A DNA stretch of 63,984 nucleotides, counting the filler, from Reticulomyxa filosa (lineage: Eukaryota > Protista > Foraminifera), in assembly GCA_000512085.1 (NCBI GenBank). It is 27 parts of 27 records of this genome, joined end to end, with 100 filler letters (N's around TTAATTAATTAA, not from the genome) between each part and the next. Parts side by side here need not be neighbours in the genome. Positions count along the whole stretch, not along the records: positions 51,985 to 55,484 come from ASPP01024178.1; positions 55,585 to 57,355 come from ASPP01001409.1; positions 57,456 to 59,258 come from ASPP01019504.1; 24 more parts are not named here. The stretch is one strand, 5' to 3'. A model generated the notes under the pieces. That model had not been told where the DNA came from. It was given only the letters and a program-made list of their open reading frames with translations, and ran no database searches. This document shows positions 51,026 to 58,400 of the stretch, piece by piece (position 1 is the first letter of the stretch; each line of letters begins with the position of its first letter). Both the position numbers and the translations under genes were made by a program.

Positions 51026-51989
51026 TTGTCATTAGGGTTTTTTTTAGAGAAAAGAGCCGGGCGTTTGTTCACTTTCACAAAGGTAATTTCTGCGACCTGC
51101 AACAACTAGCTCATGAAAAAGAAAAATGCAAACAATGAAGAAGAATGGACAAAGATTATTAAAAAAAGTATTTTGTAAAAGAATATCAGCCATTTGTTCA
51201 CTGAGATACGACATGAAATTATCAAATTCGCCAGATATTTTATCAACAATTTATTAATTTCGTTATTTTCGTTTCATTTTTGAAACATTTAGATTGTTTA
51301 TTTTTTTTCATTTAATGTACTTTTGAATTGCCATAAAATCAAAACGAATTGGACCAAATATATGAAACAGCCGTAATTCGGATGATTCCACAGTAATAAC
51401 CTTCGAAGGGTGAACACCAGAGAGTAAAGCCTTTCACGACTTCAAAAATTTCAGAGACAAAAGCAAAAATATTGACATATCTCGTTTGTTAAGCCGGTGA
51501 ACAAAACGAATGCAATTTCGACATGTACACGATTCAAATTCATCTACTTGTTGACAGTAAGCAAAGTTTTATGTCATGCTTATTCCTGAACCTATTAACG
51601 CTTAAACGAATACAGATTCTGAAAAACTACCAACAAATGATGTTGATTTTTTCAATTAAATTGGATGAAGAGTACATTGACGTGCAGTTTTTTGTTCCAT
51701 TGACCAAATAATGAACATCTTGCAAAGAAAAATTCTACTTCGATTTGTACCAAGCTTATGGATTAGTTCTTGCAACAAGTAGATCACACCTTTATTTTTC
51801 TTACAAAAAAGATATTCATTCAACTTTTAAATTTATTTTATTTAAAGATGTATTGTCACGTAAAATACCTTTTTGTTTTTTTTTNNNNNNNNNNNNNNNN
51901 NNNNNNNNNNNNNNNNNNNNNNNNNNNNTTAATTAATTAANNNNNNNNNNNNNNNNNNNNNNNNNNNNNNNNNNNNNNNNNNNNGGGGG

Positions 51990-52023
<34 letters not shown>

Positions 52024-52026
52024 TAC

Positions 52027-52685
52027 GTTTGCGCAGTTAGTGTGCTTGTGTCCAAATGCTCTCTAGACTGAGATATTATACTATTGGCGTTCATCTCGTG
52101 CTGGTTGACAGGTCTTATGGAATGCTCATTGTCCATGAAGACAATGTTCTTTACGTCTTGGATTGTCAAGTGATGATCGCATAATAAATCTCGAAATAAA
52201 TCACAAACGTTATGTTGCAATATGTCGCGATACATCATAAAGTCGCCACGATAGAACGCATGTCCATACCTTTGCACCAAATGGTGTCGCAATGTCGTCT
52301 TCCCACTATAGCCTGGACCCAATATCAGTATTTGGTACTCTTGTAACGGCTCACTGTGATCCCGACAAAACGGACACATCCATTGCACATTTGCAAACCC
52401 TTTGTGATAGGTGTCGGCTTTTAACGTACTCCGCGTTTCCTTCAAAAAATGTTTTTTCTTTTTTTTTTCTTGAGATTTTTCGCTTGCAGAGAGCGCCGTA
52501 TCTTGACCTGCACGACGCGTGGATGTAAACAAACTCTGCTTATTGTTGCTGACTATGCTGCTATGTTTTGGCTCCAAGACTTTTTTGCGTTCAGCTTGGT
52601 GATCATTGGTTCGGGTATCTACACAACCATGAACATTTGTATCAAGACTTTTAGAATTATACTCCAATGACCAACAATCACCCAT
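52027..52685 (-). CDS. Divergent heterotrimeric G-protein alpha-like subunit with extended N-terminus, first exon
   Basis: MGDCWS start (myristoylation/palmitoylation type). EYQILILGPGYSGKTT P-loop at 52319-52293, followed by LRHHLVQRYGHAF...MYRDILQHNVCDLFRDLL, which parallels G-alpha IVKQMKIIH..GY.....YK..VYSNT...I..I. GT donor at 52026. Confidence 0.7.
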
Positions 52686-54094
52686 GGTTTCTTGCTTTAG
52701 TTGTTTTTAGTTTTTTTAGTTTTTCGAAAAATTCTACAGAACTCTGTTTAATTTTTTTTTTTGGAGATGCAAGTCGTCAAAGGTGCTAATCTTGCAAAAT
52801 AAGTTTACTGCGTCCAAAATAAAAGAAAAAACCATTTGTTCATCAAATCATCACATGCACTACAATTTTAATGCAAAAGAATAATAACAAATTTACCACA
52901 ATAAAAGCTTAAATTTTATAATTAGAGAAACAAAGAAGTATTGGTTTCTCAGTGGAACTATTAGTGCAACATCTTTTTTGGGTATGAGGTTTTATGTCCT
53001 ATCTTCATGAGGTACGCCTCTATTCATACCTGCAGTATATCGTATCCACCAGTTGTTCATAATAATTTTTAAAAAACTCAAATTATAGTAAATAACAAAT
53101 TAATCAAAAACTATTGTACGGCAAGTCACTAATATAGATTACTGAACTCTGAAAGAGTTGAGGAGCCCTCAGTGGGTTAAACTTCTCCCCAACTTTTCTT
53201 CCTTTTTGTTTGTTTTCTTTCTTTTATTGTGTTATTCATCTTCCATTTACTTAATTTATTTTTGTTTTATCGAAAGCAGATCTCTTTTTGAGTAAAATTT
53301 TTCGTATTACATTTAGTACACTACTGTGCATATGCTTTGATATTTTAAGTGTTTTTCTTGCTTGGCCAGAAAAATATTGATATTTCCTTTGTATATTTCT
53401 ATTTGCCTTTGAATTTTCTTCAGAATTTTCAGAATGACGTAAATGCATATTAAAATGATTATATTGACTGAGCATATATTGTTGAATGAAAATATAATAA
53501 TGTAAGTTTTATTTATATTTCTGCGAATATGTGTTAGATTATGATGTCTTGATACACAAAGTATAAATGTCTGATTTCATCGATTTTAACTCCTAATTAT
53601 ATAGTTTTTGTTTAAAATAAATTTATTCAAATTAGAAACGGATAGCAAATCAATACTGTAATTATTGCAATTTTCAATAAAATTTAATAGATTTAACATG
53701 TTAATTCTATCGTGTTTGTCTTCTGTCTGATTTTAGCTTTATTTTTAGTTTCATGTTTCTTCTAGATATGATTTGTTGGTGTAGTTAGTAGATATTTTCA
53801 CAAAATATACAATAAATGATATACAAATTTAAAACATATAAGTCTGTTTATTTCTTTTTTTGTTACCTTATGAAGTAATAGAAATTTTGGGATTACAAAT
53901 TTTAAAATGTTTCATACTATCAAAGGTTGTCATAAAATATATCAATCTGGAATAGCTATTGATGTTTATTAGTTACCTGTGTGTCAGATGTGACTATATG
54001 CTATTTATTCTAGTTTACCAAACTGGAAAAAGCAACGTTATTAACGCTAACAGCGTTAAAGGGGCATAGTGAACATGTTCAACGAAAACTAGAC

Positions 54095-55479
54095 ATGTGG
54101 AATCCATGGCAAATCATATCGATTGTTTGGATAGCAATAAGCGTTTTTTTCTTTTTTCCAGTATGTATTATGGAAATAAGAAAGTATTGGTTGTTGCGAA
54201 CAAAACATTTTATAAAAAATCGTCAACCGTTGCTTAGTGTTCTTTTGTTTGTGGCAATCCTTTTTCATAATTTGGGTGAGTAATCTATTATTTAAAAAAT
54301 AAATAAATAAAACAAAAAAAACGTTGTAAAAACAATGAACAGTTACATCTGCCTCGGGCGTGGTGGCGTTGTTTTCACCAAAGAGCAACTTGGAGTGGAT
54401 CATAGTATTGAATTTTTTGAGCACAATAGTATGTGGATATATAGGAATCTTGAGAAGTTTTCACATATGGTATGACTATATGTACAAGCGAGAATACGTG
54501 AAAAAGCATTGGATTAAAGACTTTGCGGCCTCTTATTCATTGTTTTATGTAAAATATCGTGACTCTTTGGGCAATGTCCGTTTCACTTCAATAATATTCG
54601 GAGGATTTACAATAGTATATATTATTATGTGTTGGTATGGATCACACGTTTTCTACGCAGCATCACGTATACACACATATATAAATATATGTACGTATAT
54701 ATGCACGTATACATGTGCACAATTTCATCACCACAAAAAAAAAAAAAAAAAAGTAACATTAACGCTGATGAATAAGATGCTTATAATATCCCAACTGCTA
54801 TTTCTATTCTATGTAGTCGGGAGCGTGGTATTGATAGTGGTAGTATCGATGAAGCAATCATCAGTGCATGATTTGATATACATTCGCGAAGAAGCGAGAC
54901 TATACATGATTTGGTCTGCATTTGGGACCGTGCTGTTCGTTGTGTTGACGTGGGTATTTCGAGTGGAAGGATCATTCGCAAAGTCGTTTGTTCTGTCCTT
55001 TTCGATCGGCAATCCGAGACGAGTGCTCGTCATGATCTGTCTCAATCTCGTTTTCTACCTTTTCTTTTTCACAGGCGCAACTTGGGTGAGGAAGATGCAA
55101 CGTGCGAACAAAGATTCGACTCTCATTTCTACCAATGACATGTCTGACGACAACAACAACGATCACACAATCCACCCTCCGTCCCCTGAAAACTTTTGGG
55201 ATCAGGTCACGCGTCCGCGCATCGGTACCTTTTCTCAAGATTTTCAAAAGTCGTTGATGTTTAGCATTTTCCGAGTCATTCAAGACAAAGATGGTTTTGA
55301 AGCTTTCATGGATCACTGCATCAAGTTAAAAAAAAAAACAAAAAAAACCCTTTGGGAGGGGAAAATAAATAAATACGTATACATGTAACAATACTTTTTT
55401 TCCCCAGTGAGTTTTCAACCGAAAACCTGCTCTACCTGCTTGAGTGCATTCAATTTAAGAAAAATATATGTGATATCTA
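54095..55479 (+). CDS. Seven-transmembrane protein fused to an RGS domain (7TM-RGS), 3'-partial
   Basis: Introns 54276-54342 and 55325-55407 splice in frame; a further intron-like segment lies at about 54635-54753. Seven hydrophobic segments, with HFIKNRQP before TM2 and DLIYIREE before TM6. RGS signature VIQDKDGFEAFMDHCINEFSTENLLYLLECIQFK. Confidence 0.85.
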
Positions 55480-58400
55480 GTTAANNNNNNNNNNNNNNNN
55501 NNNNNNNNNNNNNNNNNNNNNNNNNNNNTTAATTAATTAANNNNNNNNNNNNNNNNNNNNNNNNNNNNNNNNNNNNNNNNNNNNGTTTTCCTCCTCGTGA
55601 GAAATTTGTTACCGATTGTAAAGCATTGACCATGTTATCTAATTTAAACAAATACGAAAATTGTCACGTACGAAGTCGTAATGTCGGATATCGAATTCGT
55701 TTGAGTGATGTCGTTTATTGTGGTTTTGTAATCAAGAATGTAAGTATTCTTTTTTCAATAAAACTAGTTACAAGTAGCAATAATTGAAGAACAAAAATAT
55801 TATTAAGATACAAAAGTACAAACAAAGTAAAAGGTGATAGTAAATCAAATGCATTGAATAAATCATCACACATATTCGCAGTCACTCAGAATTGATGAAC
55901 TTACTCTCGAAACAATTGAAAGTTCTATATGAAGAGGTATACAATTGAATAGTATTGGAACAAGCACTTATTGTAAAACAAATATACACATCATTCAAAC
56001 AGGAGCATTTATGTTGATGCATTCACTAATCAAAACTATTTTCATTTGTATCTTAATTCAACAGAACGAGTCCATTTTTATCGATTTTATAAGTCCAAAT
56101 TTCCAAAATTTATTAAAGGTTTCAAAGAAATTGATAAGAAATATGTTCAATTTTATTTTGACACTGATGTATTTCATTGTCAAGTCATGAATGATTTGTC
56201 TCATATTTATTAAATTGTAAATTATTGAATATCCATTTGGAAGGATAATTATTTTTTGTTTGTTTAAGCTTAAGTATTTGAATTTGAATAACACACAACA
56301 GTCGTATGATTTTTGTCTCAACAGTTTGTTCAATGCATTTTATCATCAAAGTCAATTTTGAAATTGAAGAGTCGACACGGTGATTAAGAGTGTAAATGAA
56401 AATAATGATCGTCATACTTGGCAAAGTCTTTGTCTTAATGCCACTGCGCGCATTTTTCAAAGACGATTCCAAAGATTTTCAAATGCATTGCTGTCAGAAT
56501 GTTGTTTGTGTTTGCATAGCTTGTCACGGAATGCTGCAACTAGACTATGCTCATTTGCGTCTTGTCATTTTTAAATCCACAGCGGACTGTAAAGCTTTTC
56601 GTTGCATCACGTCACAATCTGCGAATGCGAATGTGTGAAAAGCGCAATTCGCAGTTCATTTCATTGCTTTGATATTTTCCTTTATCAAGTCATTCATATC
56701 CATTTCCACCCATTCGCCTTCATCCAATTTCGACAACGGCACTTTGATCTTGTTTTTATTCTATGCCTTCTTGTCTTCCTTCCGTCAATTCGATTACGTA
56801 TTTCGTCAGAATATTTGTCACCGTTGTCAATGCAATTGGCCCCGACCACAGCCATTGCTACATTCCATCGGTGAACGCTTCAGTATCAATGCATTCGTAA
56901 TCGATATTGAAACATTTTCAATGGCAATTCAGGATCTTTTGCCAACAGTGTATTTGTTAAATGTGTTGGTGCCATATAAATCTGGTTTAGTACCTCTTCT
57001 TCCTTGTTATTTCCATTATTATTATCATTATTATTAATCATTTTTATCATTTTTATCCTTCATTCTCCAGCACCGTTCATTTCTTCCCCCTTTATTCTTT
57101 TTTAAAAAAAATTCTTTTTTTTTTTGACTGACTCGGTCACCCCATAGCTCAAAAAGAACTGGATGAGTCTTGCAACACATTGCATATTGCTACGTTCGCG
57201 TATTTGATCGTCCATTTCCGGAGGCTGAATGTAACTTGCCTCCCCAGAGCTGTCCCATCCTGCCAACTTGTTGCAGTTGCCGTTGTTGTTCTTTTGTCTA
57301 TACATTACGTTCCGCTGGTTCCGCAGGAATAGCAATCGGTACATGGGGTCTAGTANNNNNNNNNNNNNNNNNNNNNNNNNNNNNNNNNNNNNNNNNNNNT
57401 TAATTAATTAANNNNNNNNNNNNNNNNNNNNNNNNNNNNNNNNNNNNNNNNNNNNTTTTTTTTTTTTCCTCCCATCTTCCCCCTTTTGCCTTTGTGCACG
57501 CGCAGCTTGGATTTTTGTTTGTTTTTTTTTTGAAGGAGTGGGAGGGGGGGGGGGAGAAAAAAAAAAAGAGAAAGACATAATAACATCAGAAATAATGCAT
57601 GAACCAATATATGTTTGAAAAAAGGTTTGGGACTGAAAGCGCCACAAGAATCAGTAATCGCGGAAAGAGATTTAATGTTGTCATCGATGGAAGAGGAGGC
57701 ATGTATGGCCCAGGAACGTAACGAAATGAAGGAAAGAGAGACAAAAATGAGCCCCAGTCAAATGATGAATCATCACTTGTATGCTTGTTTTGTGATCTGT
57801 TTTGGGACAGGGCTGGAGTGACGATTTTGTATGCTATGTACGATTTTTTATTTTTTTTTGAAAGATACAATCGGCAAATGATTTATTGACGTATAGGCTG
57901 CAGAGAAACAAAGATGTAACGACAAACACTGGCATTGACAAGAGTGTCAATAACTCGTTTTCAATGCCAAATCCAGAAAAAGAACACACAGTTCGTTGAT
58001 CAATAGTGACGATAGTCTCTCTATTTCGTCTGAAATGTCGGGATGCCAGGAGACTTTTCGCTCCGCTAACAAGCGAATGAAACTATGCACTGCAAATAAC
58101 AGTGTTTTGGATTGAAATGTACCTTTTCCCTCTCGCTACACATACACATTACATACACATAAATTAATTCACATTCATTTCCATTGACATTGTTAATCAG
58201 GTGGTTGTTTCATTTCTATTTGCTTGCTGATCTCTTTTCATCTTTTATCTTTTTCCATTGAAGCGTCTTCTCTATTTTGTTTCCTAATTGTCACTAAAAT
58301 TATTTCAATATTTGTCACTTCTTATTTTCCTTAATGATTTCAATACAATTCGCTTCCTTCGCTCTCTTTGTAGCTCATGCATTGCTTCTCTTTCATTGCG

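What the first reader, a model, noticed from the sequence alone, without database searches (positions are those of the whole stretch)
52027..55484. Head-to-head G-alpha-like and 7TM-RGS genes on one contig: candidate self-contained receptor-GAP/G-protein module
Seen: within a single contig (no N-spacer between them), a minus-strand gene starts MGDCWS and carries a G-alpha-type P-loop. A plus-strand gene encodes seven hydrophobic helices plus an RGS box (EFSTEN). Their ATGs (52685 and 54095) point away from each other across about 1.4 kb of AT-rich DNA. Established: RGS domains are GAPs for G-alpha, and 7TM-RGS proteins such as plant RGS1 control self-activating G-alpha subunits in place of classical GPCRs. 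Inference: this may be a cognate, co-transcribed pair sharing a bidirectional promoter, i.e. a genetically linked signalling cassette. I know of no description of such linkage in Rhizaria. Both families are probably expanded in this genome, so chance adjacency is a real alternative.
Basis: partly seen in the sequence, partly recalled or inferred. Interest (0 to 1): 0.85.

Follow-up and report, generated by a model that had tools for sequence, protein, structure and literature searches.

The report
Chance neighbours: odd G-alpha, 7TM-RGS
Two real G-protein signalling genes of a foraminiferan point away from each other, but related genomes do not keep them together, and the G-alpha belongs to a conserved subfamily that seems to lack both residues needed to cut GTP, so its neighbour probably cannot switch it off.

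Summary
The piece is the whole 3.5-kb Reticulomyxa filosa contig ASPP01024178.1. Both genes are real and both are cut at contig ends. The minus-strand exon 52685-52027 is a divergent G-alpha (Pfam E 1e-6; its homologues carry G2-G4). The plus-strand gene has seven hydrophobic helices and the first helices of an RGS domain. Their ATGs are 1409 bp apart. The linked-cassette idea is not supported. Homologues of this G-alpha in other genomes sit next to a PUB-domain gene or a phosphatidylserine decarboxylase gene, and a 7TM-RGS paralogue sits behind a coiled-coil gene. The G-alpha subfamily has His at both catalytic positions (Gi1 Arg178 and Gln204) in all 8 members where both sites are visible, including R. 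filosa RFI_30954, the probable but unproven continuation of this gene. RGS proteins work by positioning that Gln, so classical GAP pairing is unlikely. Best reading: a chance adjacency of two expanded families. The worthwhile by-product is an apparently undescribed, conserved, probably GTPase-deficient G-alpha subfamily that works like plant XLGs without being one. Co-expression and chimerism could not be tested.

The parts
52027..52685 (-). Exon 1 (219 aa + 2 nt) of a divergent G-alpha: MGxC lipidation-type start, low-complexity linker, CxxCxxH motif, beta1/P-loop/alpha1 and alphaA. No gene is called here in the public record.
   Evidence: Pfam PF00503 E=1.2e-6; Atlas; homologues P0002-P0006; clade support 100/100; only the plus-strand protein is called on the contig
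52293..52319 (-). P-loop G1, GPGYSGKTT; Tyr replaces the canonical Glu (Gi1 E43)
   Evidence: Alignment A1; motif table
52356..52376 (-). CxxCxxH/S motif just before beta1, where canonical G-alpha has the end of helix alphaN; CxxC is present in all 8 subfamily rows
   Evidence: Alignment A1; metal binding is inference only
51985..52026 (-). Start of intron 1 of the G-alpha gene (GTATAC, T-run, C-run); the contig ends here
   Evidence: Sequence
52686..54094 (.). 1409-bp AT-rich (27% GC) divergent intergenic region; no tRNA, no Rfam match, only chance-level repeats
54095..54275 (+). 7TM-RGS exon 1 (TM1, R-x-P loop, TM2)
   Evidence: Hydropathy; 50% identity to exon 1 of paralogue RFI_21667, E about 1e-14
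54343..54666 (+). 7TM-RGS exon 2 (TM3, TM4)
   Evidence: Hydropathy and splice phase; aligned with the paralogue exon, too divergent for tblastn
54754..55324 (+). 7TM-RGS exon 3 (TM5, D-x-x-Y-I-R-E-E loop, TM6, TM7, linker, first RGS helices from about 55257)
55408..55479 (+). 7TM-RGS exon 4 with the EFSTEN box (55409-55426). The apparent TAG at 55478 overlaps a probable GT donor at 55480; the rest of the RGS domain is off the contig.
   Evidence: All PDB hits are RGS proteins; same intron position in paralogues L005 and L006; the donor reading is inference

Best explanation
Two independently functioning genes from families that have many members in this lineage happen to be divergent neighbours in R. 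filosa. The plus gene is an ordinary lineage-specific 7TM-RGS, a membrane-tethered GAP that most likely acts on canonical G-alpha subunits encoded elsewhere (shown: architecture and paralogues; inferred: GAP activity). The minus gene belongs to a conserved, strongly divergent G-alpha subfamily. It keeps the nucleotide-binding elements (P-loop GK[T/S]T, G2 hydroxyl and Gly, DxxG, NKxD) but has His at both catalytic positions and Tyr at the P-loop Glu (shown in homologues and in R. filosa RFI_30954; inferred for this gene). It most likely binds guanine nucleotide, hydrolyses it poorly, and acts as a constitutively on or nucleotide-insensitive scaffold or decoy that an RGS cannot turn over (inferred).
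For: Linkage not conserved: L001/L002 head-to-head with a PUB-domain gene 122 bp away; L003 behind PS decarboxylase and IF-2B genes; no 7TM-RGS exon-profile hit better than E 0.04 in any G-alpha locus; paralogue RFI_21667 lies behind a tandem coiled-coil gene, with no G-alpha match in 15 kb. Families are expanded: at least 3 related 7TM-RGS genes in R. filosa, Atlas clusters of 54 and 77 members with Foraminifera commonest among the few members of known taxon, B. natans has 39 RGS (PMC3971589) and over 30 G-alpha (PMC5784254). With assumed family sizes, 0.015-0.6 head-to-head pairs and 0.06-2.4 adjacencies of any kind are expected per genome. His/His in 8 of 8 subfamily proteins showing both sites, against Gln in 24 of 24 canonical hits. 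RGS4 accelerates R178C but not Q204L Gi1 (PMC10996109).
Against: Only three or four independent G-alpha loci and one paralogue locus had informative flanks. No true orthologue of this 7TM-RGS was found outside R. filosa. L008 is indel-prone. True family sizes in R. filosa were not obtained, and at the low end of the assumed range the head-to-head chance is only about 2%. The link between exon 1 and RFI_30954 is unproven: the splice phase at the first acceptor does not match, so a further exon or another acceptor is needed. His might support slow hydrolysis.
Confidence: 0.78

Rival explanations
1. A young, R. filosa-lineage functional pairing in which the hydrolysis-deficient G-alpha binds the neighbouring 7TM-RGS as a decoy or effector partner (as Arabidopsis XLG2 binds AtRGS1), and the two are co-regulated from the shared upstream region.
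For: Divergent orientation on one ungapped contig. Precedent for nucleotide-independent binding of a catalytically dead G-alpha to a 7TM-RGS (bioRxiv 10.1101/795088). The switch-I Gly needed for RGS contact (Gi1 G183) is retained in the subfamily.
Against: No conservation of the linkage; long intergenic gap; no expression data.
Confidence: 0.1
2. One reading: a cognate self-activating G-alpha plus its 7TM-RGS GAP, genetically linked as a self-contained cassette on a bidirectional promoter.
For: Both gene identities hold. Bikont G-alphas are often self-activating and controlled by 7TM-RGS proteins (PMC3865004). The window's RGS keeps the E-N pair of the EFSxEN box.
Against: Catalytic Arg and Gln are both His in the subfamily; RGS needs the Gln (PMC10996109; bioRxiv 10.1101/795088); the linkage is not conserved.
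Confidence: 0.06
3. The adjacency is an assembly artefact: the contig is chimeric somewhere in the AT-rich spacer.
For: The R. filosa assembly is described as highly fragmented (PMC5784254). No read or contig spanning the spacer was available; one 215-bp contig matched 53294-53504 only.
Against: No N gap, no long repeat and no abrupt compositional step in the spacer. The breaks seen in these contigs fall in intronic homopolymer runs at contig ends.
Confidence: 0.06

Closest known systems
Plant 7TM-RGS (Arabidopsis RGS1) and Trichomonas TvRGS with self-activating G-alpha (PMC3865004, PMC3971589)
   Same: Seven hydrophobic helices followed by an RGS domain; the architecture is common in bikonts, and RGS expansions are reported in rhizarians.
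   Different: No significant sequence match to these proteins was obtained: the only detected relatives are R. filosa paralogues. The RGS domain is cut after helix 4. No genetic linkage to G-alpha was found described for these systems (no papers).
Plant extra-large G proteins, XLG1-3 (bioRxiv 10.1101/795088; PMC8584482)
   Same: G-alpha-like domain lacking the catalytic Arg and Gln; a cysteine motif N-terminal of the G domain; some members are much longer than canonical G-alpha.
   Different: Substitutions are His/His rather than Glu and Arg/Lys; the P-loop and NKxD are kept; the MGxC start is kept; there is a single CxxC; the extra length is mainly a low-complexity insert inside the helical domain, not an N-terminal half. 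No XLG was named among the homology hits; relationship to XLG was not tested in a tree. Works like, not a member.
GTPase-deficient G-alpha mutants (Gi1 R178C and Q204L, PMC10996109; Gs R201H and Q227H, from memory)
   Same: The same two positions are substituted.
   Different: Here both changes are natural, fixed and shared by sequences only 59-90% identical at the nucleotide level over the exon-1 core.
Human GNA13-RGS9 neighbourhood on 17q24 (from memory, not checked; the paper was not held)
   Same: A G-alpha gene and an RGS gene as neighbours.
   Different: RGS9 is not the GAP for G-alpha13, which shows that adjacency need not mean cognate pairing; far larger spacing; RGS9 has no TM domain.

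Membership tests
Heterotrimeric G-alpha (PF00503) | P-loop G1 followed by the helical-domain alphaA | tested here: met
   Pfam E=1.2e-6, profile 18-101; variant GPGYSGKTT
Heterotrimeric G-alpha (PF00503) | G2, G3 (DxxG) and G4 (NKxD) downstream | tested here: inconclusive
   Off the contig for this gene; met in homologues on single contigs; G2 and G3 are present in RFI_30954, link unproven
Heterotrimeric G-alpha (PF00503) | N-terminal lipidation site (Gly2, nearby Cys) | tested here: met
   MGxC in the window and in 5 homologues; sequence motif only
Catalytically competent, RGS-regulated G-alpha | Catalytic Arg (Gi1 R178) and Gln (Q204) | tested here: not met
   His at both sites in 8 of 8 subfamily proteins including R. 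filosa RFI_30954; not directly visible in the window
Catalytically competent, RGS-regulated G-alpha | Measured GTP binding, hydrolysis and RGS stimulation | not testable with these tools
   Needs biochemistry
7TM-RGS | Seven transmembrane helices N-terminal of the RGS domain | tested here: met
   Seven KD-19 peaks of 1.5-2.8, counted exon by exon; no dedicated TM predictor was available
7TM-RGS | RGS domain (PF00615) | tested here: inconclusive
   No Pfam hit on the separate exons; 5 of 5 PDB hits RGS at E about 1; Atlas RGS clusters 0.86-0.89; motif conserved in paralogues; the domain is cut off
7TM-RGS | Asn thumb (RGS4 N128) needed for GAP activity | not testable with these tools
   Lies beyond the contig end; paralogue L005 has a candidate by eye only, and phmmer did not confirm it
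Conserved bidirectional gene pair or cassette | Head-to-head orientation | tested here: met
   ATGs at 52685 (-) and 54095 (+)
Conserved bidirectional gene pair or cassette | Linkage conserved in relatives | tested here: not met
   PUB, PS decarboxylase or no match beside G-alpha homologues; coiled-coil gene beside the RGS paralogue
Conserved bidirectional gene pair or cassette | Close transcription starts and co-expression | not testable with these tools
   No RNA run on record holds the stretch
Plant XLG | Large N-terminal domain with cysteine-rich motif and NLS/NES before the G-alpha-like half | tested here: not met
   Only about 115 aa precede beta1, with an MGxC start and one CxxC

The most novel reading that the evidence does not exclude
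Foraminifera (probably; only R. filosa is named) have a conserved, undescribed G-alpha subfamily that naturally carries His at both catalytic positions, Tyr at the P-loop Glu and a CxxC motif in place of the end of the G-beta-binding alphaN helix. It would be a pseudo-GTPase or constitutively GTP-bound G-alpha that arose independently of plant XLGs. In the most novel version (about 0.1 on its own) it is also co-regulated with, and binds, the adjacent 7TM-RGS as a decoy.
Probability: 0.6. Interest if true: 0.5.

Novelty: new variant of a known kind. Interest (0 to 1): 0.3.

Why it matters
A genetically linked receptor-GAP/G-alpha cassette would let one read cognate pairs straight from genomes in lineages with dozens of each, but the evidence here goes against it. 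The by-product matters moderately. A natural G-alpha fixed for changes at both catalytic residues, conserved across distant marine and freshwater samples, would be a second case, next to plant XLGs, of a G-alpha leaving the GTPase cycle. It is directly testable by expressing an intact homologue.

Tried and rejected
Pfam on separate exons gave no RGS or 7TM family. Single-sequence AlphaFold models were unusable (pLDDT 53 and 31) and the Atlas fold search of the first gave only TM below 0.5. The word-based homologue search with the TM read-through frame found only the window's own protein. The metagenome scan added only the locus already held. Sequencing runs: one small run of unknown type covering 211 bp of the spacer, no test of splicing, expression or chimerism. 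Rfam gave only sub-threshold miRNA matches to the TA/CA-repeat intron 2, rejected; no tRNA. Adenylate kinase/AAA was considered for the minus gene because it tops the PDB hits of exon 1, and rejected because homologues continue into G-alpha G2-G4. A premature stop at 55478 was considered; it is more likely split by an intron donor like the one at 55325.
Full report
Source. The piece 51985-55484 is identical to the whole 3500-bp contig ASPP01024178.1 of assembly GCA_000512085.1. Proteins from other contigs of that assembly are named Reticulomyxa filosa, a monothalamid foraminiferan in Rhizaria. The public record calls only one protein on the contig, a 302-aa model (P0001) that reads through an intron and lacks the first exon and the RGS box. 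The G-alpha exon is not called.

Observation, minus strand. An open frame runs from ATG 52685 to a GT donor at 52026, followed by a T-run and the contig end. Pfam gives G-alpha at E=1.2e-6 for aa 113-199, and 28 of 30 Atlas neighbours are G-alpha clusters. Five database proteins are 50-67% identical over the core. On their contigs the gene continues into exons that score as G-alpha at about 1e-36, and the single-frame homologue P0006 aligns with Arabidopsis GPA1 from the P-loop to beyond switch II. The protein is therefore a G-alpha, although G2-G5 of this copy are off the contig.

Observation, plus strand. Exons 54095-54275, 54343-54666, 54754-55324 and 55408-55479 have GT-AG borders in consistent phase, and hydropathy counted exon by exon gives seven helices. 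The RGS call rests on several weak lines. Pfam is silent on the fragments. All five PDB hits of the last exon are RGS8/10/16, at E about 1. The Atlas neighbours are RGS-bearing clusters. Two R. filosa paralogues, RFI_21667 and RFI_17063, share the loop after TM5, the first RGS helices and an E[FY]xxENL box behind an intron at the same position. I accept 7TM-RGS as very likely.

Is the pairing conserved? No, wherever it could be checked. In L001/L002 (one taxon, two samples) the G-alpha homologue is head-to-head with a PUB-domain gene 122 bp away. In L003 (GCA_014466315.1) it lies 85 bp behind a phosphatidylserine decarboxylase gene, with an IF-2B gene further up. In L008, 4.3 kb of upstream DNA has no match to exon-wise 7TM-RGS profiles, though this contig has frameshift errors. 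L004, L009 and L012 have too little flank. From the other side, paralogue RFI_21667 lies behind a same-strand coiled-coil gene, and none of the G-alpha queries gives a credible match in its 15-kb locus. These loci are 59-90% identical in the exon-1 core, so they are distinct taxa. That they are foraminifera is likely but not shown. No orthologue of this particular 7TM-RGS was found outside R. filosa, which limits the test.

Chance. I could not obtain family counts for R. filosa. The rhizarian B. natans has 39 RGS genes (PMC3971589) and over 30 G-alpha genes (PMC5784254). With assumed ranges of 30-120 G-alpha, 40-250 RGS and 25,000-40,000 genes, 0.015-0.6 head-to-head pairs and 0.06-2.4 adjacencies are expected per genome. 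One pair found by scanning a genome for any eye-catching neighbour is therefore not strong evidence. The 1409-bp spacer is longer than the 85-355 bp gaps in the comparison loci and holds no tRNA, Rfam family or notable repeat.

What the G-alpha is. The window's exon-1 core groups with seven homologues at 100/100 on a very long branch, apart from canonical G-alphas. The group shares an MGxC start, a CxxC motif just before beta1 and a P-loop with Tyr at the position of Gi1 Glu43. A search with a downstream exon returned the same subfamily, including R. filosa RFI_30954 (P0016) on a 1.5-kb contig that begins in an intron. All 8 subfamily proteins that show both sites read CHVRSTG at switch I and DVGGHR at switch II: His replaces both the catalytic Arg178 and Gln204 of Gi1. 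A ninth fragment shows His at switch II. All 24 canonical hits keep Gln. NKxD is intact; G5 is altered. RFI_30954 is the only R. filosa member found and is probably the continuation of this gene. However, exon 1 ends in phase 2 and the first acceptor on that contig needs phase 1, so an intervening exon (homologues have a long insert there) or another acceptor is required. The join is unproven.

Mechanism. RGS domains accelerate hydrolysis by using an Asn to orient the switch-II Gln (bioRxiv 10.1101/795088), and RGS4 rescues Gi1 R178C but not Q204L (PMC10996109). A G-alpha with both residues replaced is therefore an unlikely substrate for a neighbouring GAP. My best reading (0.78) is two independent genes: a typical lineage-expanded 7TM-RGS acting on canonical G-alphas, and a hydrolysis-deficient G-alpha that binds nucleotide and acts as a constitutive or scaffold/decoy subunit. 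Shown: identities, motifs and the different neighbours. Inferred: loss of GTPase activity, what each protein binds, and separate promoters. Rivals: a young decoy pairing like XLG2 with AtRGS1 (0.10), the classical cognate cassette (0.06) and a chimeric contig (0.06). The single available run covers only 211 bp of the spacer and tests none of these.

Comparison and novelty. 7TM-RGS proteins are known across bikonts and RGS expansions are reported in Rhizaria (PMC3971589, PMC3865004), so the plus gene is a new member of a known kind. The G-alpha subfamily works like plant XLGs (loss of both catalytic residues) but fails the XLG architecture test. I found no paper describing it, but the library lacks the R. 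filosa genome paper and most subscription journals, so novelty is provisional. No paper on head-to-head G-alpha/RGS pairs was found. Verdict: observation confirmed, cassette not supported, and a moderately interesting new G-alpha variant. Interest 0.3.

Noticed in passing
L007 (ASPP01027139.1, RFI_30954) and P0006, P0009-P0014: A conserved G-alpha subfamily with His at both catalytic positions, a Tyr P-loop and a CxxC motif; members differ by a low-complexity insert of up to several hundred residues in the helical domain.
   Followed up: yes
window:52027-52685: The G-alpha exon is not called in the public record of the contig, and the called plus-strand protein reads through introns and misses exon 1 and the RGS box.
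   Followed up: yes
window:51985-52026 and L007:1-30: Contig ends fall in introns with a T-run plus C-run on one contig and a G-run plus A-run on the other, a complementary pattern that may explain assembly breaks.
   Followed up: partly
L005:11030-12935: Paralogue RFI_21667 is split into two gene calls; its RGS domain appears by eye to be interrupted by long low-complexity inserts, so Pfam and phmmer miss it. RGS counts in this genome are probably underestimated.
   Followed up: partly
window:53294-53504: A 215-bp contig from a small public run of unknown type matches the middle of the spacer exactly; whether it is RNA or DNA is not on record.
   Followed up: no
L008: The contig comes from a sample labelled as chicken but carries this protist-type G-alpha at low coverage with frameshift errors; probable contamination or mislabelling.
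   Followed up: no
window:54650-54715: The TA/CA-repeat intron 2 gives sub-threshold Rfam miRNA matches, a low-complexity artefact.
   Followed up: yes
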